NCBI GenBank assembly: GCA_038087875.1
Contig: CM075977.1
Location: forward strand, 157,728,001 to 157,792,000
Length of the DNA: 64,000 nucleotides
From: Malacoraja senta
Taxonomy: Eukaryota
Reading direction: 5' to 3'
The notes under the pieces are model-generated. The model made no database searches and was not told the origin of the DNA. It saw only the letters and a program-made list of their open reading frames with translations. Each line of letters opens with the position of its first letter. Within the stretch, counting starts at the first letter, position 1. Positions 1,189 to 61,544 of this stretch are shown here, piece after piece. Position numbers and translations under genes: made by a program.

Positions 1189-1470
1189 CGCAAACACAGC
1201 CAGCCCGCGAACACAGCCAGCCCCCGCCCGCGAACACAGCCAGCCCTCGCCCGCGAACACAGCCAGCCCCCGCCCGCGGAACACAGCCAGCCCCCGCCCG
1301 TGAACACAGCCAGCCCCCGCCCGCGAACACAGCCAGCCCCCGCCCGTGAACACAGCCAGCCCCCGCCCGCGAACACAGCCAGCCCCGCCCGCGAACACAG
1401 CCAGCCCCCGCCCGCGAACACAGCCAGCTCCCGCCAGCAAACACAGCCAGCCCCCGCCCGCGGAACACAG
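1189..1470. repeat. 23-bp minisatellite GCGAACACAGCCAGCCCCCGCCC, about 12 copies
   Basis: Tandem units read directly. Confidence 0.9.
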
Positions 1471-1745
1471 GCCACACTCCACTCCTACAGCTTTATTCTC
1501 GGCTCCGGTGATTGACAGCGGATGACGGAAGTGGCGTCGCCGTCCCGGCGAATAACAGACCAATAACTTTTGTAATATTTCACCGATCGGAACAAAACTT
1601 GGTGCGCTTGGAGCAGAGGAGATCGGTGAGTAAGGTGTTGAAAAATCCTTGCGATATGGGGTATCGTTTTTGCACAAATTTTGCGCAAATTTAAAACAAC
1701 GCATTCCGGAAGAGGACAAGATGACAGTTTTAGTAATGGTATAGA

Positions 1746-5736: not shown

Positions 5737-6162
5737 TTAGCTTGCAGTGTTATTGCCAACCTAAGAGACTTCCTTGGGTTTACATCTTGTACTCACATTC
5801 TGTCCCATTGGTGCATTGAAGTTAAATCCACTAGATTTGTATTGCATGACAAAGCACATTTGTTTCTAAGGTAAGGTAACTTTTCCGAAACAATCTCTCA
5901 CATCCTCACAACTCACACAACCATGTCTATAATACCAAAGTCAATTCTGTATGAGTATCAATATTACTAAAAGTCTGATCTTGATCACTTCCTGTTCTTC
6001 TGTATATTGATTTTACAAAAAACGCTGCCACTTACGGCTGTGATTTTTGGCCATCTTACTCAGAGTCCCACTCCGCTGCACATGACAAGAGGATTTTTCC
6101 CATCGATGAAAAATAAAAGAGGTATTAGTGTTTAGAAAATGTTGAGATACTCTCTCCTGAAG

Positions 6163-6302
6163 GCCATGCCCCTTCCGGAGGGACTATAAAACCGGAAGTG
6201 TTGTGCCTCAGTCAGTCTCTGCAAGATGGGGGGAACGAGAGGGTCACGTTTCTCAGTCTGAGCTGTGAATAACACTGAACACATGTCTACTAAACTGTGA
6301 GT
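6163..6302 (+). promoter_or_regulatory. Helitron-borne Pol II core promoter, first exon and donor (predicted)
   Basis: TATAAAA 6185, CCGGAAGTG 6192, TCAGTCAGT 6208-6216, CAAGATGG, GTGAGT 6297. Confidence 0.5.
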
Positions 6303-6348
6303 GGATTTACTGACCTGTCAGTACCCTTAATGTGGTTTGAAAATGTAG

Positions 6349-6533
6349 TTTGGAAATGCTAAAGCTGTGTTGCGTTTGGTTTGGAAATGCTAAAGCTGTG
6401 TTGCCTTTGGTTTGGAAATGCTAAAGCTGTGTTGCCTTTGGTTTGGAAATGCTAAAGCTGTGTTGCCTTTGATTTGGAAACGCTAAAGCTGTGTTGCCTT
6501 TGGTTTGGAAATGCTAAAGCTGTGTTGCCTTTT
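6349..6533. repeat. 31-bp minisatellite TTGGAAATGCTAAAGCTGTGTTGCCTTTGGT, about 6 copies
   Basis: Direct reading; the same array is inverted at about 17243-17425. Confidence 0.9.
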
Positions 6534-6559
6534 GTTGAGTGATTTCAAGATAATCAGAT

Positions 6560-7311
6560 GCTTCTAATGCGCCCCGGGCCGTCTGTCCCTGCGGCCGGGG
6601 GGTGAATCACCCGGTGTGGGTGTCGGGGGTGAATCACCCCGTGTGTGGGTCAGGTTCCGGGGGTCGGATCGGGGGGGGGGGGAGTGAAACACGCTGGTGT
6701 GGGGGTCGGGGTCCTGGGCGGTGCATCGCGGTCAGTGACTCTGGGTGGGCAGAGGGAGCAGACTGCTGCCTCCACTCTCCCACCCGGCCCCGTGTGTTTG
6801 TGCGCTGATGACCCAGAGCCCCTCACAGTGCGGCCGCACGGGGGAGACGAGGTGGAGGGCCGGCATGGCCAGACAGTGCTGACCCTGGGGGGGGGAGAGT
6901 GGGGGCTTTCCCGAGGGATGCGCTCCTTCGGCCGCTTACACCTTGGTGCTCGGGTTCAGAGCGCCCAGTCATCCTCCAGCCCCGATGGTCTTGTGTGGGA
7001 AAATGATCCCCACCCTCCCGTCTCCCCCGGCCGGTGATGTGATGGACGCGGGGGTCTGGATCAATCGCTGACAAGTCCCGCCCTCCGGCGACGTCATGTC
7101 CGTTATTTGGCTTTTCGGCGTTGCGTCTGTTTGGTGTTGACTTATCGGCATTGTGCCCTTTCGGTTAGTTGGCTTTTAGGCGTCCCGTCCTATCGGTTAT
7201 TTGGCTTTTCGGCGTTGCGTCCGTTTGGTTATTTAGCTTTTCAGCGTTGTACACTTTTGGTTATTTGGCTTTTTGCCGTAGTTTCCGTTCGGTTTCTTGT
7301 CCTTCAACGCC
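6560..7311. mobile_element. One end of a GC-rich non-autonomous DNA transposon with reiterated subterminal repeats (MULE/foldback-like; unclassified)
   Basis: Repeated CGGTTATTTGGCTTTTCGGCGTTGCGTC units at 7100-7300 ending ...CCTTCAACGCC; the other end was not found. Confidence 0.45.
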
Positions 7312-8159
7312 ACGTCTGCACATGTCAACAGACATTGTTGGCTGGTGTGGGCATGTTGGGCCGAAGGGCCTGTTTCCACACTGTATCACTCTATGACTCT
7401 AACAAGAAAACTAAATCAAAACATAATGTTAGAAATGGAAGCAAGCATCTGGGATAAATAAAAAAATAGAAAGTAATCAAACATGGTAATAGCAGTGCAT
7501 TAGAGACCATCTGATAATTAAATGGAAATGAAAGAGGAAATAGGTGTTCTGAGAAAAGGGTATAATATAATAATCACACAATATTATTGGTAAAAGTGGA
7601 AAGAACAAAATAAATATGGGGACTACAGATTTTAGCTCAAAATAGATAAGTTTCCTTGCTTAGGATATTATGAGCTCAAACATGAGTGAGGCTTACTGAA
7701 CTTGTGATGGGAAAAGTTTTGTAAAATAAATTAAGGTATGTTGCTGAATAAGAGACAAAAATAATCACAATTAAATGTTGAAAATGAAGACTGAGGAAGT
7801 CATAAAGAACCTATGTGAGGCAAAGACCAAAGCAATACATGTTGGGAAGGCTAAGGACAAGAGTTGTGGAGTTTTATGAGTGAAATTAGGTAAACTAGAG
7901 AAAAAATATTGATAAATAAAGTGAACCTTGGTGGAAAACTTTAAAAAAAGTGCTCAATAAGTTCATTCGAATTATATTCTACCACAAAACAAAAACATCT
8001 TAGGCCAAAATAATACAAGGCGGGTGAATGACGACATAAGATTAAAACTGAAACTAAGGTTAACAAAGAATACCGGTTTCATTTAAGTCAGTGGACAGGA
8101 AAATAAAAAAGAATGCAAAAGAAGATTAAGAAGGAAGAAATTGACATAGTAAATCAAAG

Positions 8160-15010: not shown

Positions 15011-16439
15011 CTAAACTAAGTGGGACCCGTTCCCCAACGCAATATTCCACCACTCACCCATTCCCCCAACACAGACCCTTCCCCCAATGCAATATTCCAC
15101 CACTCACTCATAGCCCCCAACTGCACAGGCGCGGCTCATTTCCCTTCATCCCTCAGCACTCCCTCCCCCTCCTCTTCATCCTCCCTTTTCTTTCCCCTCT
15201 CATACTCCCCAATCCCTCCACCTCTCCCTCCCTCTCATTTTCTCTACCCTCAGTCACACCCTCCCTCCCTCCATAACTCCCCTCCCTACCCCCATCCTAT
15301 CCCTCTATCCCCCACTCCTCACCTTCCCCTAACCCACCCCACCCCCATTATCCCTCCTCACCTCCCCAATGCCATCCTCTCCCCCTATTCCACACTCCCT
15401 ACCTCCCCCACTCCTCACCCTCTACTCTCCCTCCTCTCCCAGTCTCCCTCCTCACCTCCCCCACTTTCCCCCCTCTCCGTCCATACTTCCTCCTCTCCCT
15501 CAATCCTCCACACTCACTACTCACCTCCCCAGGATCTCAAGGGTGACATTCCTTTCCATCCTTGCATGCCCCTCCCTCACGTCTCCCTCCTTCTCCTTTC
15601 CCTACCCTGAGTGACTCCCTCACTCCCTCCGTCTCTCCCTCCAGAACTACTCTCCCCACCCCCCTATCCCCCCCTACCCCCCCACACCTCACACCCCCCT
15701 ATCCCCCCACTATACCTCCCACACTGCCCTCCTCTCCCTCTATTCCCCACTCACTAACTCCCCCACTCTCCCTCCTCACCTCCCCAACTTTCTCCCTCTC
15801 CCTCCCTATCCTCTCCTCTCCCTCAATCCTCACAATCCCCCTCCTCACCTCCCCAGGTTTTCCCCACTCCCTACCTCCCCCTCCTCTCCCTCTATTCCCC
15901 CTTCTCCGCCACTCTCCTCACCTCTCCCCCTCTCCCTCCCAACCCCCTCCTCTCCCCCCTCAATCCCCCCACTCTCCCTCCTCACCTCCCCAGGATATCG
16001 AGGTTGCCACTCCTTTCCCCCGAAGCAGCTGTGGCTGTGCCCTGTGGTGGCTCTGGCTTTGGCCCGCGGTGGCTCAGGCTATGGCCTGCAGCGGCCTTGG
16101 CTGTGAAACGCGGCGGCTGTGGTCCGCGGCAGCTGTGGCCGTCCTCTCCTGCCACTTCCAGCCGAATGGCTGTGTGGATGTGGCAGTGCAATGCTGGATG
16201 AGGCGGGCGCCGCCGGTGAATGACAGGACCGGAGACCAATCTGCATGCCGGTCACTGACAGAAGAGACCAATCTGCGCATGTGCTGTTTTAAAGATTTTC
16301 AAACATTAATAACTTTAAAACTATACCATCGATTGGAACAAATCTTGGTGCACTTGTAGAGCTATCCTGTACCATTTATCGTGTACAAAGAGAAAAAATG
16401 CAAACCGGAAGCGCACAAGATCAGAGTTTTAGTTATGTA
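15011..16439 (-). mobile_element. Non-autonomous Helitron (second subfamily) with a C-rich low-complexity interior
   Basis: Degenerate 3' end (+ strand ACTAAACTAAGTGGGACCCGTT vs ACTAGACTAAGTGGGACCCGTT at 16439); 5' end TACATAACTAAAACTCTGATCTTG on the minus strand. Confidence 0.75.
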
Positions 16440-17811
16440 CTAGACTAAGTGGGACCCGTTAGGTCCCAGCATCACACGGGAGGGCTGGTCCCCCAACGCA
16501 ATATTCCACCTCTCCAACAATTCCAATATTGGTGGCCAGTGGGGGGGGGGGCTTTCTGGAGCGCTAGTATGGTTGTTCAGGGCTGAAGGGACTGGTTTCT
16601 AGAGGGCTAGTATGGACATTGTGGGCCGAATGGATTCTTGGGCTGGTGGCTCAGTCACTCAAGCCTGTTTTGCTGGCAGCTCACTCACTCACGGCTGGTG
16701 GGCTGCCAGTTGACTCACGGCTATTCCTTGAAATTCCATTTCAAACAGGGTGCAAGGCCACCAAATTCAAGTGCAGTTCTTACCACTTCAAGCAGGGTGC
16801 AAGGCCACCAAATTCAAGTGCAGTTTCATACCATTTCAAGCAGGGTGCAAGGCCACTGAAGACAGCGTGTCGTGACATCTCCCTCCTCCATCTTGCAAGG
16901 ACTGAGCCACGCCCACACTTCTGGGTTTTATGGTCCGTCCCCCTCCCACCAGAAGGGGCGTGGCCTTCATGGCGTGATTGACAGGAGAGAGAATCTCAAC
17001 ATTTTCAAAACACTAATAACTCTTTTATTTTTCATCGATGGGAAAAATCCTCGGCACCTGAAGAGCGGAGGGGGACTCTGAGTAAGATGGCCAAAAATCA
17101 CAGCCGTACATGGTAGCGTTTTTTCTAAAATCAATATAAAGCGCAAACAGGAAGTGGTCAAGTTTAGACTTTTACTTATATAGAAGGCAAGGCAACTTTA
17201 ATTAGGCAAGGCAACTGTAATTAGGCAAGGCAACTTTAATTAGGCAACACAGCTTTAGCATTTCTAAACCAAAGGCAACACAGCTTTAGCATTTCTAAAC
17301 CAAAAGCAACACAGCTTTAGCATTTCCAAACCAAAGGCAACACAGCTTTAGCATTTCCAAACCAAAGGCAACACAGCTTTAGCATTTCCAAACCAAAGGC
17401 AACACGGCTTTAGCATTTCCAAACTATATTTTCAAACCACATTAAGGGCACGGACAGTTCCGTAAAACCACTCACAGTTTAGTAAACATGTGTTCAGTGT
17501 TATTCACAGCTCAGACTGAGAGACGTGACCCTCTCGCTTCCCCCATCTTGCAGAGACTGACTGAGGCACTCCACACTTCTGGATTTTATAGTCCCTCTGG
17601 AAGGGGCGTGGCCTTCAGGAGAGAGAATCTCAACATTTTTAAAACACTAATAACTCTTTAATTTTTCATCCTCTTGTCCTGCGCAGCGGAGGGGGACAGA
17701 GTAAGATGGCCAAAAATCATAGCCGTAAGTGGCAGCATTTTTTCTAAAATCAATACACAGAACAACAGGAATTGGTCAAGATCAGACTTTTAGTAATATA
17801 GAGAAGATAGA
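16440..17811 (-). mobile_element. Complete non-autonomous Helitron family A (two 5' modules)
   Basis: 5' A|TC (17811; core TCTATATTACTAAAA from 17802); 3' hairpin GGGACC-N5-GGTCCC at 16451-16467 then CTAG|T at 16440; second internal 5' end TCTATATAAGTAAAA at 17184; collinear with 59891-61524. Confidence 0.9.
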
Positions 17812-38622: not shown

Positions 38623-41600
38623 CTAAGGGTATGCAGAGGTGAAGAGATGGGTCTTGAGGCAGGACTGGAGGATGGTGAGGGACTCAGAATTTCGGATCAA
38701 TTGTGGGAGGGAGTTCCAGAGCCTGGGAGCTGCCCTGGAGAAGGCTCTGTCTTCAAAAGTGCAGAGGTTGGATTTCGGAATGGAGAGGAGACCGGCTGAT
38801 GTGGATCTGAGGGACCGTGAGGGTTGGTAGGGGGAGAGGAGGTCAGTGAGACAAGGGGGGGCCAAGTGGTTGAGGGCTTTGTAGGTGAGGACCAGGATTT
38901 TGTAGATGATCCGGTGGGAAATGGGAAGCCAGTGAAGTTCTTTGAGAACTGGGGTGATGTGGTGCCAGGATTTGGTGTGGGTGATGAGTCGGGCGGCTGC
39001 ATTCTGGACCAGTTGGAGTCGGTTGATGTTGCTGGAATTAATGCCAAAGAGAAGAGAGTTACAGTAGTTCAGTCGGGAGGAGATGAAGGCATGGATGAGT
39101 CTTTCAGCAGCGGGGGGTGTGAGAGAGGGTCTGATTTTGGCAATGTTGCGGAGGTGAAAAAATGATGTTTTGACAACATGGCGGATGTGAGGCTCAAGGG
39201 AGAGGGTTGAGTCAAAGATCACGCCAAGGTTGCGGGCCTGAGGAGATGGGGAGACAGTGGTGCCATCAATAGTGAGAGTGGGGTTGTTAATTTTGGTAAG
39301 TGTTGATTTGGAGCCAATGAGGAGAAATTCTGTTTTGTTACTGTTTATTTTAAGGAAGTTGAGTTGCATCCAAGATTTGATGGCTGACAGGCAGGAGTTG
39401 ATATGGGAGAGAGGGGGGTGGTGGGGGGACTTGATGCTGAGATAGATCTGGGTGTCATCAGCATAGCAATGGAAGTCCAGGTTGAAGTGACGGAGTATGT
39501 GACCAAGGGGGAGGATGTAGATGATGAAGAGGAGGGGACCGAGAACGGAGCCTTGGGGAACGCCTTGAGAGACAGTGGCTATGGCAGAGGTGTGGTTATG
39601 GAGAGAGATGAAGTGGGATCGGCTGGAAAGGTAGGAACGGAGCCAGCTGAATGCAGAACCTTCAATGCCAAGGTCTTTAAGTCTGGTAAGCAGGATATGG
39701 TTCACGGTATCGAAGGCTGCACTCAGGTCGAGGAGGATGAGGATGTTGAGGGAACCAGTGTCAGCAGAGGTGAGGGGGTCGTTGAGGACTTTGAGGAGAG
39801 CATTTTCTGTGCTATAGAGGGGGCGAAAGCCAGATTGGAGGGGTTCGAATAGGTTATACGCGAGGAGGTGGGAATGAAGTTGTGACGAGACGATACGCTC
39901 CAGGGTTTTTGAAAGAAAGGGGAGGTTTGAGATAGGGCGGTAGTTAATGAGAGAGGAGGGATCAAGACCAGGTTTCTTTAAGATTGGTGTGACAGCAGCA
40001 GTTTTTAAAGCAGAGGGGACAATGAGGAGTTGAAGAGATTAGTGAGGGAGGGGCAGAGAGCGGGGAGGCAGGACTTCAGCAGGGGAGTGGGGAGAGGGTC
40101 GAGGGAGCAGGTAGTGGGTTTGGAAGTGCTGATGAGTTTGGAGATTTCAGTAGGGGTGACCGGGTCAAACTGGGAGAGGAAGCAGTGTGGAGGAGGGGTA
40201 AGGAGGTCAGTGGAGATGTTGAAAGGAGGGGCCTTGGTAGGTGGTGGAGTAGATGCTGGGGAGTCGGGTACAGGGGATAAAGATTGATAGATGGTGCTGA
40301 TTTTGTCAGCGAAAAAGTGGAGGAATGAGTTGCAGAGATCCGGAGTGGAGGTAGGGAGAGTGTTGGCTCGAGGCTTGAGGAGGTTGCACACTGTGGAGAA
40401 GAGGGTTCTGTGGTTTAGGCAGGGGTCGGTGAATATGGAGGAGAGATAGGCAGATTTAGCAGCAATGAGGGCATCTTTGTAGGCAGTGAGGTGGAGCTTG
40501 TAAGCTTCATGGTGGACTGTGAGAGATGATTTATTTATGAGTCGTTCAAGTCGGCCACCAGTCTGTTTCAGCTATACGAAGTGCAGGTGTGTACCAGGGT
40601 GAAGATTTATTAAAAGTTACGGTTCTTGTTTTGAGGGGAGCCAGAGTGTTAAGGGAGGTAGACAAGGTGGAATTGAGATGGTTTGTGAGATCATCAGGTG
40701 AGATGTGGGTTGAGTCCAGGGGGAGAGTGGTGGAGAGCAGGTCAGAGAGATGGTGGGGGTCGATGGATTTTAGATTACGGAAGGTGATTTCTCAGAGGAA
40801 GCGGGGGCGAGGCGTCGGAGAAGGGATGATGAACCGTATAAGCTTATGATCAGAGAGGGGGAAGAGGCATGGATGGAGGTCGAGTACCGGTTGATTTGTA
40901 GAGTGGACCAGGTCAAGGATGTGACCTTTGTCATGAGTGGGAAAGGTGACATGCTGAGTGAGAGAGAAGTTGTCAAGTAAAAAAGCGAATTCAGATGTGA
41001 GCTTGCAGGTGGGGGAGTCCATATGAATATTTAAGTCACCAAGTAGCAGCAGACGTGGGGAGAGAGATGAGGCAAGTGTGAGGAGTTCAGTGAAGTCAGA
41101 TAGGAAGGAGGGGTTTGGTTTAGGTGGCCGGTAAATGAGGATGACTGTCATGGAGGAAAGGGCTTTGAAGGCGAGGAATTCAAATGATGCTATTGGGGGG
41201 AGGGGGAGTTCAGCGATCGGAAAGTTCTGGTTGAAAATAACAGCAAGGCCATCTCCATGGCGGGAGGGGCGGGGTTTGGAGATATAATTAAATCCAGATG
41301 GGGATGCTTGATTGAGGGAGAAGAAGACATTGGGTTGTTGCCAGGTTTCATTGAGCAGAAGGAAGTCAAGAGTGTTGTCAAGGATTAGTTCATGGAGGGC
41401 AAGGGCTTTGTTGTTGAGCGACCGGGTGTTGAGGAGGGCAAAGTTGGCATTGTGAGAGGGTGGAGGGATGGGGGCAGGCTGGAGAGATCTGAGGTTGTCC
41501 CAGTTGAAAGTGCATGTGGTCAGCTGGGATGGGGGTGACGCGGTTGAGGGGGGGCAGAGCGTGGTAGCGAGCAGATGGATGGAATGTCCGTGGCCGAAGC

Positions 41601-48505: not shown

Positions 48506-50156
48506 GTAGCAATGTTACAACATTTTGAGATTTTAAAAATCAAGTCCGTAATTTATCCCATCAGATAAAGCATAAAAAGACATTTAATTTAACACCTAAT
48601 TCACTTTCATATCTTCAGTATTAAAAAAGTTATGGCTATTTTCATACTCAGAAATTAGCATCTTGTTCCTTATTGCTTTTCCATTGACTTAACACAAAAG
48701 CTGTGATCGAGGACAGTCAGAAGCCCATAATTTTCTTAAAAATTAAGAGAACTGAAAGAAATTTTCAGTTATTATAGCTTGAAGCATTCTGAAACAAATA
48801 TGAAACAATCTTACTTAGATGACATGAAATTAAAGCATATAATTAGTTAGTTACCTAATTGTAGCTAATTACAAAACCCAATTACTAGATCTAAACATCT
48901 ATCAATTCCTTAAGAATAGATTAACATTTTTAAATAGCCTAAAAGGCCTGTCTCACGAGTCTGCGGTCATTGGCGGCGAAACAGGAAGAATCTACCGCTC
49001 CTGGGCCGCCATAGACTGCGCACTCGGTCAAACGCACAATTCCGGGGCCGTGCGGCGTTGTTCCCAACACCGCACGGTGCTAAAATACAACCAACACTGT
49101 TCAAAAAACTTTTCCTACCGCACAGCCACCACCAGTGAGGCACGAGTGCGGCACCGCCGCCGCCACATCCGCCGCCAGTGTGGCACGAGCGCCGTGCGTC
49201 GAACTTGCACCGCACAGCCTCTGCCAGTGAGGCATGACTGCCGCCACAGCCGCCGCCACAGCCTCCGCCAGTGAGGCACGTGTGCGGCACGGCCGCCGCC
49301 ACAGCACGCGATCAGCACGGCCGCTGCCACAGCCCTGCAGATCCAAAATGACGTCATCGCAGTCGGCCCGCCCTTTTTTTTTTACTTACCGCAAGCTCGT
49401 GGGACTTAAATCACTCGGCCCCCGCGCAGCACCCGTGCGGCGCTCCCGTGGCATAGGCTCGGCACTCTCGCCGTTGCCGTGCGGTCCCCTCTACCGGCGA
49501 CGCCGCGCTTCACCGTCGATGACCGCAACACAGTGAGACAGAGCCTTAAGTGTCCAAATAACATTCACACAAGAATTCACAATATAACATAATTTTTAAA
49601 TCTCATTGTCATGGATATATAGGCCAAATGGAAGGAATTTAATGTTTAATACCTGCAAATTAATGGGGATTTAAATCATCTTGCGAGTGGGTTTTTCTGG
49701 AACGCGATCATTTGGAACGTTGATTTGCGGTGAATTTAACCCCGTATCGACATGAAAAATACTGCCGTTAGTTCGGGGAAAAGAATCACCGTTTCGCATT
49801 TTAAAATGTGAATTAAAGGCCTCTTAAGAAGCACTTTTATACATAAAATAAACGGCTTTCGTTTACCTGTCCCGTGTGTGAAATCAGTCCCCTTTGTCGG
49901 CGTTGACGGCTTACGAAGCTGATTTTAAAATAACTCCAGCGCTGAACATGTCGGGCGAATAAAAATAAAAAATACACAAAACGCCCGTCAGAACGATTCT
50001 TCAGCAAAAGCTTGCACTCCAACGAAATATAATTCAGGACAAGGTAGGAGAAACCCGCGTTATAACCCCGCCCCCCCCTCAAAGGCGCCAAAATCGCGCA
50101 CACGGCCAGTGGCAGAATTGCAGCGCTGCTGAAGGTAAGTATTGTAACATACCTAC
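48506..50156. mobile_element. Unclassified non-autonomous DNA transposon
   Basis: Imperfect TIR GTAGCAATGTTACAA / TTGTAACATACCTAC; TSD AGATA at 48501-48505 and 50157-50161. Confidence 0.82.
48943..49546. mobile_element. GC-rich PIF/Harbinger MITE
   Basis: TIR AAGGCCTGTCTCAC / GTGAGACAGAGCCT, TAA TSD at 48940-48942 and 49547-49549. Confidence 0.82.
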
Positions 50157-58118: not shown

Positions 58119-60097
58119 TAGTCTGGCAGGCTGCTGATATGACCTTGCAGGAAACAACCTCCTAATTGTTCTGGGCATCAGAGAGAACACTAGGGCTGCA
58201 AACCATCTGGCTACTCTTTTTCTATCTCATGTTACTTTCTTCTTTGAGTATTTACGGGAATTAGATAAGTGACAGGAACTGCCTGGCCATTTGCATAGCT
58301 GGAACTGTGCAAAATTTCCAGAAGCAAGCATGGGACATGAATAAGCATCTTCTATTTCACAAGCTATTTAAAATCAGAGAACAGAATTTCACTGCATGAA
58401 GTACCATAAACAAGCCTGTTACGTGTGAAAGGCAAGAATATGCAATAGTGGTTGATGGTCACCTTCAAGGGGCAACGAAGAATGAGAGGAGATTTAATTA
58501 ATGTGTACAAGGTTATGACTGGCTTAGACAGGCTAAATAGAAAATTATATTTTCCCTCTATCAGGTGGTTCACATTCAGAGGACATATTTCTGAGATGAA
58601 GGGCAAAATCTAAGGTTGGAACTTGAAGAAATATCCCTTTTTTTTACCCAGAGGAGTGATGATGTGGAACTGTCTTCCTGTAAGAATGATGGGAAGAACA
58701 GGGAATTGGAAAGGGACCCGAGGGGAAATAATTTACGGGACTATGGGAAACGACTGGCGAACAAATGAAAATGATTGCTGAAAAGGTCGCTGGTATAGAC
58801 AGGTTATGCCGTATGACACAAAATGCTGGAATATCTCAGTGGATCAGGCAGCATTCTTGGAGACATACTGTAGATAGGTGACATTGTGCTGAAGGTCCTC
58901 TTTCGATTAAGCATGTAGTATATAATTCAATGCATTTCTACAATTTATGGCCAATGTATCCAATTTGCTTTGGAGATAAAGGCATCTTAAATCTTTGAGT
59001 AAACTGTTGTTTTTCAGATCAATGAGGCCAAAAGACAAACTGGAGATAATTTTTGGTCATTTAGATGAGTTTTAAACCAAAGAATCAGTGTTAACACAAG
59101 CAACATTTCTGCTGAAAAGTCTTCATTGAACTAAGAGAATTTTTAACTCCACTGATTTAGAGGCAGATATTTACATTATTTGGAAGTTTTGCATAACTGC
59201 TCATCAAAGCAATGGGCTGCCGTCCATAAAGCAGAAAGTAATAGGCTTGATCAGTACCCTGGTGATCTTGAAAAGTAAGCCCATTGACCTGCATAAAGGT
59301 GTTGCCCAAGCCATTGTGCCCAGACCTAACATCCATCTTGTAAGAATCATGCTGAAAGAGAATCCATTCAATATACCTGTGTGGATATTGTCAAGGCTTC
59401 AAAATTTAGTTTGTCTTCCACAACCCAACTAACTCACGAGGAAAACTCTCCAAAGATAAGATACGCAAACATCCAGAGTCGCTGATCATTGGTTCTCTTC
59501 TCTGTTCCTTTTGCATTGTCTATGTGTATGGGAGAAGAGGACATATAGTCTCAAACCCTGTTAGATAAAAACCTGAAAATAAATAATTTGCAGAGTTTTG
59601 GGCAGAGAATGAAGGAAGGGTCATATAGTCAGTAGGGACCTGACAGGTTGAATATCATCCTTTGTTGTAACCTGTCCATGAGACTGTGATTCTGTAAAAG
59701 TGCAGCTCCATAGTGCTGGTGGTTAGAACATTAATCCTGGAGGCTGTTTTGTGCTTGATGAAGTTTAGATTTTTGATTCCAGGTGGCTGAATATGGGTCC
59801 AACAAGTGTTGAGCACTGGCTGGTAGATGGCGGTGAGGCCTTGTGGAGCCAGGAAGTGAATCATTACACAGTTTTCAGATTGGGCTATCATCTATATTAC
59901 TAAAAGTCTGATCTTGACCACTTCCTGTTGTTCTGTATATTGATTTTAGAAAAAAAAAGCTGCCACTTACGGCTGTGATTTTTGGCCATCTTACTCAGAG
60001 TCCCCCTTCGCTGTGCAGGACAAGATGATTTATCCCATCAATGAAAAATAAAAGAGTTATTAGTGTTTTAAAAATGTTGATATTCTCTCTCCTGAAG

Positions 60098-60240
60098 GCC
60101 ACGCCCCTTCCGGAGGGACTATAAAACCCGGAAGTGTTGAGTGCCTCAGTCAGTCTCTGCAAGATGGGGGAAGCGAGAGGGTCACGTCTCTCAATCTGAG
60201 CTGTGTATAACACTGAACACATGTCTACTAAACTGTGAGT
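60098..60240 (+). promoter_or_regulatory. Helitron module 1 predicted promoter, first exon and donor
   Basis: CCACGCCCC about 60099, TATAAAA 60120, CCGGAAGTG 60128, Inr-like TCAGT with A at 60148 or 60152, CAAGATGG, GTGAGT 60235. Confidence 0.55.
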
Positions 60241-60294
60241 GTGGCTTTACTGACCTTGAGTTCCCTTAATGTGGTTTGAAAATGAAAATGTGGT

Positions 60295-60672
60295 TCCTTT
60301 AAAATAAAGCTCAGCAAATGGTTGTTGGTGGTGGTGGTTGCTTTGAAATAAAGTTCAGCAAATGGCCGTTGCTGGTGGTGGTTGCTTTGAAATAAAGCTC
60401 AGCAAATGGTTGTTGGTGGTGGTGGTTGCTTTGAAATAAAGCTCAGCAAATGGTCGTTGGTGGTGGTGGTTGCTTTGAAATAAAGCTCAGCAAATGGTCA
60501 TTGGTGGTGGTGGTTGCTTTGAAATAAAGCTCAGCAAATGGTCGTTGGGGGTGGTGGTTGCTTTGAAATAAAGCTCAACAAATGGTCATTGGTGGTGGTG
60601 GTTGCTTTGAAATAAAGCTCAGCAAATGGTCGTTGGTGATGGTGGTTGCTTTGAAATAAAACTCAGCAAATG
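60295..60672. repeat. 44-bp minisatellite GCTTTGAAATAAAGCTCAGCAAATGGTCGTTGGTGGTGGTGGTT, about 8.5 copies
   Basis: Direct reading. Confidence 0.92.
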
Positions 60673-60856
60673 ATTTCTAAACTTGACATCTTCCTGTTTG
60701 CACTGTATAGTGCACTGTATAAAATGCTACCACTTACGGCTGTGATTTTTGGCCATCTTACTCAGTTCCCCTCCGCTCATCAGGTGCAGAGGATTCTTCC
60801 CATCAATGAAAAATAAAAGTGTTATTAGTGTTTAAAAAATGTTGAGAACCTCTCTC

Positions 60857-61027
60857 CTGTCAATCAGGCCATGAAGACCACGCCCCTTCCGGTGAGAGGG
60901 GAGTGGAATTATAAAAGCCAGAAGTGTGGGTGTGGCTCAGTCTCTGCAAGATGGGGGAGGGAGAGGTCACGACTCTGTCTGTGCTGTGAATCAACTGAAC
61001 ACACTGAATGTCTACTGAACTGTGAGT
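60857..61027 (+). promoter_or_regulatory. Helitron module 2 predicted promoter, first exon and donor
   Basis: CTGTCAATCA 60857, CCACGCCCC, TATAAAA 60910, TCAGT with A at 60939, CAAGATGG, GTGAGT 61022. Confidence 0.55.
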
Positions 61028-61090
61028 GTGGTGTTTATGTGGTGTTTTGTGTGGTTTTATGGCAGTTTTATGGCAGTTTTATGGTGGTTT

Positions 61091-61250
61091 CACCCTGCTT
61101 GAAATGGTATGAAACTGCACTTGAATTTGGTGGCCTTGCACCCTGCATGAAATGGTATGAAACTGCATTTGAATTTGGTGGCCTTGCACCCTGCTTGAAG
61201 TGGTACAAAACTGCAATTGAATTTGGTGGCCTTGCACCCTGCTTGAAAAG
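61091..61250. repeat. 48-bp minisatellite CACCCTGCTTGAAATGGTATGAAACTGCACTTGAATTTGGTGGCCTTG, about 3.3 copies
   Basis: Direct reading; inverted counterpart at about 16735-16857. Confidence 0.88.
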
Positions 61251-61544
61251 GAATTTCAAGTATTAGCTGGGAGTCAACTGCCAGCCCACCAGCTGTGAGT
61301 GATCTGCCTTGAGGCTTGAGCTGCCACCCCAAGAATCCATTTGGCCCACAATGTCCATACTAGCCCTCTGGAAACCAGTCCCTTCAGCCCACAACACCCA
61401 TACTAGCTCTCCAGAAAGCCCCCCCCCCAATGGCCACCAATATTGGAATTTGGCGGAGAGGATTGCGTTGGGGGACCAGCCCTCCCATGTGAACATGGGA
61501 CCCAACAGGTCCCACTTAGTCTAGTAAAGCTATAAAAGGAAATA

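What the first reader, a model, noticed from the sequence alone, without database searches (positions are those of the whole stretch)
59891..61524. Non-autonomous Helitrons carry a portable promoter + first exon + splice-donor cassette, duplicated within one element
Seen: the family A 5' modules (6163-6302, 60098-60240, 60857-61027; minus-strand about 17470-17612, with a truncated CATAAAA variant near 16925) repeat the same order. It runs GC/KLF box CCACGCCCC, TATAAAA, ETS-like CCGGAAGTG (CCAGAAGTG in some modules), initiator-like TCAGT, CAAGATGG, and about 85 nt later GTGAGT. The Inr A lies 28-32 nt after the first T of TATA. CAAGATGG is a YY1-like core that also holds an ATG in good Kozak context. 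Module 2 has indels relative to module 1 yet keeps the TATA-Inr spacing (29 nt). Established: this is canonical TATA/Inr geometry, and Helitrons are known to spread regulatory sequence. Inference: the family may seed spliceable first exons across the genome, probably inherited from the autonomous Rep-Hel promoter.
Basis: partly seen in the sequence, partly recalled or inferred. Interest (0 to 1): 0.75.

Follow-up and report, generated by a model that had tools for sequence, protein, structure and literature searches.

The report
Skate Helitron carrying promoter-like exon cassette
This is one copy of a very abundant rolling-circle transposon (Helitron) of a skate-like fish whose inner part looks like the start of a gene (promoter, tiny first exon, splice donor), a known kind of cargo best described in bats, and the one RNA data set I could lay on it shows read-through transcription, not starts or splicing at the predicted sites.

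Summary
59891-61524 is a non-autonomous Helitron: 5' TC after A, a 3' hairpin 11 nt before CTAG, then T. The window holds five copies of one motif series: GC box, TATA, ETS-like site, initiator 25-32 nt after TATA, CAAGATGG. Four also have GTGAGT 83-87 nt after the initiator.

- **Double cassette:** it is a head-to-tail chimera of two subfamilies about 75% alike, not an internal duplication. In the copy at 17802-16440 the second half keeps its own Helitron 5' terminus.
- **Scope:** the cassette is specific to this family. Two sister families in the window share only the first ~190 nt.
- **RNA:** poly(A) RNA reads of a related species, laid at family level, show no start pile-up, no drop in depth at the donor, and reads that continue upstream of the TATA box.
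- **Decay:** the ETS-like site is intact in 2 of 5 modules. CpG content equals the genome background.
- **Origin:** unresolved. I favour an old capture of a host gene's 5' end over the element's own Rep/Hel promoter.

The concept is known from HelibatN3/NUBPL in bats. First readers of this scan noted the same cassette at other places in this genome. Verdict: a new member of a known kind, of modest interest.

The parts
59891..61524 (+). Copy 3: complete chimeric non-autonomous Helitron. Layout: module 1, 44-bp satellite, module 2, 48-bp satellite, 3' end.
   Evidence: It has 5' TC after A, and 3' CTAG before T.
59891..60085 (+). 5' terminal region shared with sister families B and C (first ~190 nt)
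   Evidence: nhmmer alignments
60098..60240 (+). Cassette 1: GC box 60099, TATAAAA 60120, CCGGAAGTG 60128, initiator A 60148/60152, CAAGATGG 60160, second ATG 60221, GTGAGT 60235
60241..60295 (+). Intron-like tail of module 1. The family-wide DNA depth ends here.
   Evidence: summed depth in X18 falls about 13-fold after 60295.
60290..60672 (+). 44-bp tandem array, 8.7 copies. This is variable cargo; copies 1 and 2 carry a 31-bp array instead.
60673..61030 (+). Module 2, a second diverged 5' half that lacks its first ~16 nt here. It holds cassette 2: TATAAAA 60910, initiator A 60939, CAAGATGG 60947, GTGAGT 61022.
61091..61248 (+). 48-bp tandem array, 3.3 copies, shared with copy 2
61250..61524 (+). 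Helitron 3' region with hairpin 61497-61513 and terminal CTAG 61521-61524
   Evidence: It is 86% identical to 16856-16440.
5958..6536 (+). Copy 1: module 1 (cassette 6164-6302) plus a 31-bp array. Its 3' end was not found.
16440..17802 (-). Copy 2: a chimeric element with the same layout as copy 3. Cassette 1 lies at 17611-17470. Module 2 starts with its own 5' terminus at 17184 and has CATAAAA at 16932. It has no donor.
15011..16439 (-). Family B Helitron lying directly against copy 2's CTAG. It shares the 5' ~180 nt and the 3' terminus but has no cassette.
1453..1745 (-). 5' part of a family C Helitron. It shares the first ~190 nt, then runs into a different CpG-rich block and a 23-bp array.

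Best explanation
The cassette is a family-specific inner block of a hugely amplified non-autonomous Helitron family of a skate-like fish.

**What it is.** It has the anatomy of the 5' end of an RNA polymerase II gene: GC box, TATA box, initiator about 30 nt downstream, an 83-87 nt leader with a start codon and 4 2/3 codons, a consensus 5' splice site, and about 55 nt of intron. I read it as a relic of a real gene start that the element acquired once, before the two subfamilies (module 1 and module 2) split. Rolling-circle transposition then copied it passively.

**Where it came from.** I favour capture of a host gene's 5' end, as in bat HelibatN3/NUBPL, over the family's own Rep/Hel promoter, by roughly 5 to 3.

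**Why there are two.** Elements with two cassettes arose when a module-1 half without a usable 3' end was mobilised together with a downstream module-2 element, using that element's 3' terminus. This is a head-to-tail chimera formed by 3'-end bypass.

**What it does now.** Present copies are mostly inert and decaying. They are transcribed as passengers of surrounding transcripts, not from their own initiator.

**Shown and inferred.** Shown here: Helitron identity, the layout, family specificity, decay, and read-through RNA. Inferred: that the block was once a working gene start, the direction of capture, and the bypass mechanism.
For: - **Helitron hallmarks and three copies with conserved ends:**
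- **Geometry kept in five modules:**
- **Leader length:** 83 nt from the initiator A in both subfamilies despite indels, with the second ATG kept open to the donor.
- **Conservation:** motif columns 43/48 identical against 67/95 for other cassette columns between subfamilies.
- **Family specificity:** the cassette begins where the cargo of sister families B and C begins.
- **Chimera:** module 2 of copy 2 keeps its own 5' terminus, and no 3' terminus precedes it. A direct head-to-tail contact of two Helitrons lies at 16440/16439. Contigs joining 60295 back to 59890 occur in another organism's run (table 5c).
- **Abundance:** summed word depth of 0.4-1.7 million against 28.5 on the unique flank in X18. 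This is a rough figure, of the order of 10^4 copies.
- **Precedent:** captures of gene 5' ends dominate and amplify best in bat Helitrons (PMC4224331). The NUBPL cassette works as an exon trap (PMC4778049).
- **Leads, not tested here:** scan notes of ALG13, HTRA2 and SAC3D1 first-exon captures by related Helitrons in this genome.
Against: - No parent gene was identified, because the tools give no access to the rest of this genome.
- The motifs were picked after the fact, and all copies are related by descent.
- CpG content of the cassette (observed/expected 0.27-0.44) equals the window average of 0.40. It therefore carries no mark of a protected promoter.
- The best-conserved blocks between the subfamilies lie upstream of the motifs (59971-59990 at 20/20; 60031-60070 at 36/40).
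- The RNA test used one poly(A) library of a related species, about 6% sampled, and covered only module 1 and its flank.
Confidence: 0.5

Rival explanations
1. The cassette is the family's own promoter, leader exon and leader intron for the Rep/Hel transposase gene. Non-autonomous copies retained it when their inner part was deleted.
For: - The cassette sits at a fixed position just inside the 5' region in two subfamilies that are 25% diverged.
- Motif columns are better conserved than their neighbours, as expected if selection acted on autonomous masters.
- Leader length and the second ATG are kept.
Against: - Sister families B and C share the 5' ~190 nt but not the cassette.
- An unchecked scan note (s1-203309) describes an intron-less, stop-free Rep/Hel ORF in this genome, which needs no spliced first exon.
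- No Rep/Hel sequence lies in the window for comparison.
Confidence: 0.25
2. The cassette is a live mobile promoter and exon trap. Many copies start transcripts at TCAGT and splice from GTGAGT into downstream host exons, seeding new first exons genome-wide.
For: - The core-promoter geometry is canonical and the donor matches consensus.
- The bat NUBPL cassette does exactly this in experiments (PMC4778049).
- In X24 there is a roughly 3:1 bias in read direction downstream of 60104.
Against: From:
- No place where many molecules begin.
- No joint starting at 60234/60235.
- No loose end at the donor among the best-supported ones.
- Depth is unchanged across the donor.
- The direction bias is accounted for by a module-2-like variant (46 loose-end reads at 60112; about 22 reads carrying rare variants from 60129 to 60258). 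These reads extend upstream of the TATA box and through the donor.
- There are no reads on the unique flank of this copy.

Other evidence: the ETS-like site is lost in 3 of 5 modules, TATA is mutated in one, and the donor is deleted in one.
Confidence: 0.12
3. The motif series is a chance constellation in ordinary Helitron inner sequence and never served as a gene start. It recurs only because the copies are related.
For: - All five modules descend from one ancestor, so there is a single independent instance.
- The motifs are short and were chosen after the fact.
- CpG content equals background.
- The RNA data show no activity.
Against: - A perfect TATAAAA, a perfect YYANWYY 29-32 nt downstream, an ATG open to a GTGAGT 83 nt after the initiator, and GC and ETS boxes upstream in the right order are a lot for 145 nt.
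- The spacing and the ATG are kept across 25% divergence and several indels.
Confidence: 0.15

Closest known systems
HelibatN3 (Myotis) carrying the NUBPL promoter, 5' UTR, first six codons, splice donor and part of intron 1
   Same: - A non-autonomous Helitron.
- The cassette has a promoter, a very short coding start, a donor and the start of an intron.
- It was amplified to thousands of copies.
- The idea that intronic sense insertions could trap exons (PMC4778049, PMC4224331).
   Different: - No parent gene is identified here.
- No transcripts that start in, or splice from, the cassette were seen.
- The host is a cartilaginous fish.
- The depth-based copy estimate is about ten times higher.
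- Many elements carry two diverged cassettes.
Helitron chimeras and transduction by 3'-end bypass (Helraiser experiments; natural Helibat chimeras)
   Same: There are two 5' halves and one 3' terminus in one mobile unit. Helitrons also lie directly head to tail in the same window (16440/16439).
   Different: The bypass is inferred from layout alone. No empty site or progenitor pair was examined.
Helitron and Helentron derivatives with internal tandem repeats (DINE-1/DINE-TR1 of Drosophila; satellite-bearing elements of bivalves). This comparison rests on my own knowledge, not on a tool result.
   Same: Variable minisatellites (44, 31, 19 and 48 bp here) lie between conserved ends and differ between copies of one family.
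   Different: These are canonical Helitron1-type ends (TC ... CTAG, insertion at A|T). They are not Helentron-type ends.

Membership tests
Helitron (canonical, Helitron1 type), non-autonomous | 5' terminus TC and 3' terminus CTRR | tested here: met
   The element starts TCTATATT and ends GTCTAG in copies 2 and 3. Copy 1 starts TCAATATT.
Helitron (canonical, Helitron1 type), non-autonomous | Short GC-rich hairpin about 10-12 nt before the 3' end | tested here: met
   GGGACC-CAACA-GGTCCC at 61497-61513, 11 nt before the end. It is also present in copy 2. The fold z-score alone is weak (-1.3).
Helitron (canonical, Helitron1 type), non-autonomous | Insertion between A and T without target-site duplication | tested here: met
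   Copy 3 is flanked by A and T, copy 1 has a 5' A, and copy 2 has a 3' T. Copy 2's 5' neighbour is C, which is an exception. No empty site was available.
Helitron (canonical, Helitron1 type), non-autonomous | Autonomous partner encoding Rep/Hel with matching termini | not testable with these tools
   The window holds no Rep/Hel ORF. Scan notes s1-175015 and s1-203309 report one elsewhere; I did not check them.
Promoter and first-exon capture cassette of the HelibatN3/NUBPL type | The cassette is homologous to the 5' end of a host gene outside the element | not testable with these tools
   No search of this genome was possible. A protein search with an ORF over the module found nothing.
Promoter and first-exon capture cassette of the HelibatN3/NUBPL type | Transcripts start inside the cassette | tested here: not met
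   there was no start pile-up, and reads extend upstream of the TATA box. This rests on one poly(A) run of a related species, so power is limited.
Promoter and first-exon capture cassette of the HelibatN3/NUBPL type | Splicing from the cassette's donor to downstream acceptors | tested here: not met
   no joint or prominent loose end at 60234/60235, and depth continues into the intron-like tail. By my estimate a minor spliced fraction of up to about 15% cannot be excluded.
Promoter and first-exon capture cassette of the HelibatN3/NUBPL type | Amplified with the element to high copy number | tested here: met
   11,021 contigs of X18 were laid. Summed depth is 15,000-59,000 times that of the unique flank, which is not an exact copy number.

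The most novel reading that the evidence does not exclude
In some tissue or stage not sampled here, the roughly 10^4 cassettes act as a dispersed set of TATA/initiator promoters with a ready-made leader exon and donor. Skates would then carry a far larger Helitron-borne exon-trap system than bats, one that seeds alternative first exons genome-wide.
Probability: 0.12. Interest if true: 0.6.

Novelty: new member of a known kind. Interest (0 to 1): 0.33.

Why it matters
I found no paper describing Helitrons of cartilaginous fishes. This family seems to fill about a percent of the genome, so a dated, annotated catalogue of it would matter for skate genome annotation. Its promoter-like, exon-like and donor-like blocks are exactly what misleads gene predictors.

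If even a small share of the copies were active, they would be a large natural source of alternative first exons. The concept itself is already established from bats, and my RNA check points to passive read-through.

Tried and rejected
1. **Rfam and tRNA scans.** The window and the element match no family, so the cassette is not a known small-RNA gene.
2. **More copies by protein search.** A search with the 75-aa spurious ORF over module 1 found nothing.
3. **More skate DNA through the LINE reverse transcriptase ORF at 38626-40038.** All named hits among the 120 listed are bony fishes, with one entry labelled bacterial, and none is named as a skate. No extra loci could be harvested, and a larger conservation test was not possible.
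4. **Homology of the cassette to family C.** Alignment beyond the first ~190 nt is not above shuffles, and the shared short motifs lie in a different order. I withdrew my earlier impression that the TATA region is shared.
5. **Contigs of X7 that begin at 60145 and 60150 as possible evidence of starts.** They begin right after the polymorphic site at 60149 and end at the variable sites 60242-60245. These are graph breaks, not RNA ends.
6. **The 3:1 direction bias downstream of 60104.** It is explained by a module-2-like variant whose reads run upstream of the TATA box.
7. **Minus-strand ATG and GTAAGT look-alikes in 59962-59995.** I considered a two-way promoter. The equivalent position in family C does not keep them, so I dropped the idea.
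8. **Choice of stretch for read laying.** I kept the stretch clear of the tandem arrays.
9. **Rep/Hel query.** No Rep/Hel query sequence could be obtained from any tool.
Full report
**What is there.** The stretch 59891-61524 is a complete non-autonomous Helitron. It begins TCTATATTACTAAAAG directly after an A. It carries a six-base-pair hairpin (61497-61513) 11 nt before its end, ends in CTAG and is followed by T.

A self-comparison of the window finds three copies of the family:
- Copy 1 at 5958-6536 on the plus strand.
- Copy 2 at 17802-16440 on the minus strand.
- Copy 3, which is the finding itself.

Copies 2 and 3 share one layout: module 1 (about 400 nt), a tandem array, module 2 (about 350 nt), a 48-bp array, and a 275-nt 3' region. 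The first array differs between them. It is 44 bp in copy 3, and 31 bp plus 19 bp in copies 1 and 2.

**The observation.** All five modules carry the series (T/C)ATAAAA, TCAGT, CAAGATGG in order. The gapped pattern occurs five times against none in shuffles, and nowhere else in the window. Measured positions:
- The initiator A lies 25/29, 28/32, 28/32, 29 and 29 nt after the first T of the TATA box.
- The A at 60152 sits in a perfect YYANWYY.
- GTGAGT follows 83-87 nt after the initiator in four modules. Module 2 of copy 2 has lost that part and reads CATAAAA.

Some details weaken the picture:
- The ETS-like site keeps its GGAA core in only two of five modules. The others read CCAG, a CpG transition.
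- The GC box is CCATGCCCC in copy 1.
- The ATG inside CAAGATGG opens only an 11-12 codon frame that stops before the donor.
- A second ATG, followed by 4 2/3 codons (MSTK, MSTE or MFTK), is the one that stays open to the donor, and it does so in all four modules that keep the donor.

**The "duplication".** Modules 1 and 2 are about 75% identical to each other. Module 1 copies are 89-91% alike, and module 2 copies 86%. In copy 2, module 2 begins with its own Helitron 5' terminus, TCTATATAAGTAAAAGTCT at 17184-17166. No 3' terminus precedes it.

The double cassette is therefore a head-to-tail chimera of two diverged family members that moves as one unit. It uses the first 5' end and the last 3' end. 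The raw material is visible in the same window: copy 2's CTAG at 16440 touches the 5' region of another Helitron, family B at 16439-15011. In another organism's run, contigs join position 60295 back to 59890 with five letters between (table 5c).

Mobilising downstream sequence after the 3' terminus is bypassed is the mechanism shown for Helraiser (PMC4778049). Here it is an inference from layout.

**Is the cassette part of the common Helitron 5' region?** A profile of the five modules finds family C (1745-1453, minus strand) and family B. Both align only over the first ~185-190 nt. Beyond that, pairwise alignment to family C is no better than shuffles, and the short shared motifs stand in a different order.

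The cassette is therefore the family-specific inner block of family A, and it starts where the cargo of the sister families starts. In the DNA-like run X18 the summed depth stays level through the module up to 60295 and then falls about 13-fold. Essentially all family A copies thus carry the block, including about 55 nt after the donor.

**Abundance.** X18 matches the unique flank without a mismatch at depth 28.5. The module collects 11,021 contigs and a summed depth of 0.4-1.7 million. The tool warns that this is no copy number. I take it as an order of 10^4 copies. Runs of six coded organisms hold parts of the stretch.

**Conservation.** Between modules 1 and 2, the 48 motif columns are 81-90% identical, against 69-72% for the other 95 columns of the cassette (Fisher p about 0.01 for the pair within copy 3). 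This hints at some past constraint.

Three things limit its weight. The motifs were chosen because they recur. The sample is one pair of lineages. The best-conserved blocks lie outside the list (59971-59990 at 20/20; 60031-60070 at 36/40). Within module 1 copies, motif and non-motif columns are equally alike (92-94% against 93-94%). CpG observed/expected is 0.27-0.44 in the cassettes against 0.40 for the window, so there is no sign of a protected, unmethylated promoter.

**RNA.** I laid 59400-60330 at 85% likeness so that reads of all family copies would count. I kept the stretch clear of the tandem arrays. X24 is a poly(A), paired-end RNA run of a related organism kept as raw reads, about 6% sampled. 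It gave 785 reads.
- None lay on the 490-nt unique flank.
- On the element both directions are present.
- No place met the tool's criterion for many molecules beginning or ending.
- No joint starts at the donor.
- The six best-supported loose ends of X24 lie at 59889/59890 (element boundary), 59923, 59955, 60112 and 60295. All of these are subfamily or cargo break points. None lies at 60234.
- Depth summed over both directions is 78 just before the donor, 67 across it and 104 after it.

Downstream of 60104 one read direction dominates about 3:1. That excess is explained by a module-2-like variant. 46 reads fit only from 60112 onward and carry a median of 50 further letters upstream, beyond the TATA box. 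About 22 reads in one direction carry variants that are rare in DNA, at 60129, 60161-60167 and 60258. They cover the TATA-to-initiator interval, the whole leader and the donor without splicing.

Most RNA over the cassette is thus read-through. My estimate is that at most about 15% could be spliced at the donor in this sample. The test has limited power: one library, one related species, and module 1 only.

**Origin.** The block looks like a gene start. Two sources are possible. I could not decide between them, because no tool reaches the rest of this genome and no Rep/Hel sequence is in the window.

For host capture:
- The family specificity of the block.
- The known bias of bat Helitrons toward capturing promoters, 5' UTRs, first exons and first introns, and toward amplifying those best (PMC4224331).
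- Untested scan notes of ALG13, HTRA2 and SAC3D1 first-exon captures by related elements.
- An untested note of an intron-less Rep/Hel ORF (s1-203309).

For the element's own promoter:
- The fixed position.
- The modest motif conservation across subfamilies.

I put capture at about 0.5 within the readings, own promoter at 0.25, chance motifs at 0.15, and broad present-day activity at about 0.12. The last concerns present activity, not origin, so it overlaps the origin readings.

**Comparison with the known.** The closest known system is HelibatN3 with the NUBPL promoter, six codons and donor, which traps exons when mobilised in human cells and drives a few bat transcripts (PMC4778049). This skate family has the same anatomy and the same amplification. 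It fails the two functional tests I could run, and its parent gene is unknown. I found no published description of Helitrons in skates.

First readers of this scan noted the same cassette at other places in this genome (s1-203311, s1-181373, s1-182918, s1-184396, s1-213412), with no follow-up shown.

**Verdict.** This is a real feature: a new member of a known kind, probably inert, and of modest interest.

Noticed in passing
window 15011-17802 (minus strand): Three Helitron 5' regions and two 3' termini lie stacked head to tail: copy 2's two halves, then family B starting one base after copy 2's CTAG. Family B carries a CpG-rich block (16040-16290) and about 850 nt of GA-rich low-complexity sequence.
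   Followed up: partly
window 38626-40038 (minus strand): A 471-aa stop-free LINE reverse transcriptase ORF has its best database hits in bony fishes. Identity reaches 83% to entries from Micropterus salmoides and Scophthalmus maximus and 80% to Gadus morhua. No hit is named as a cartilaginous fish among the 120 listed. This may reflect horizontal transfer, or only database make-up.
   Followed up: no
window 59400-60330 as laid (variants at 60129, 60161-60167, 60256-60258): A low-copy, module-2-like variant of the cassette makes up about a third of the sense-direction RNA reads in X24 and forms a contig in X7. In the DNA-like run X18 its marker letters make up 0 to about 0.4% of the summed depth, depending on the marker. 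It may be one Helitron copy inside an expressed gene, and would be the first locus to look at.
   Followed up: partly
window 6545-7330: After copy 1's 31-bp array comes a GC-rich block (GC 0.67, CpG observed/expected 0.68) and a 32-bp repeat rich in CpG (observed/expected 1.45). No Helitron 3' terminus of this family follows, so copy 1 is either truncated or carries other cargo.
   Followed up: no
window 48951-49600: The strongest CpG island of the window (GC 0.64, CpG observed/expected 1.14). It may be a host gene promoter. The host gene was not identified.
   Followed up: no
window 1203-1470 and 1453-1745: Family C Helitron 5' region followed by a 23-bp array (11.6 copies). Both module 2 copies carry CTGTCAATCA, but in a different order relative to the GC-rich box.
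   Followed up: partly
   Followed up: no
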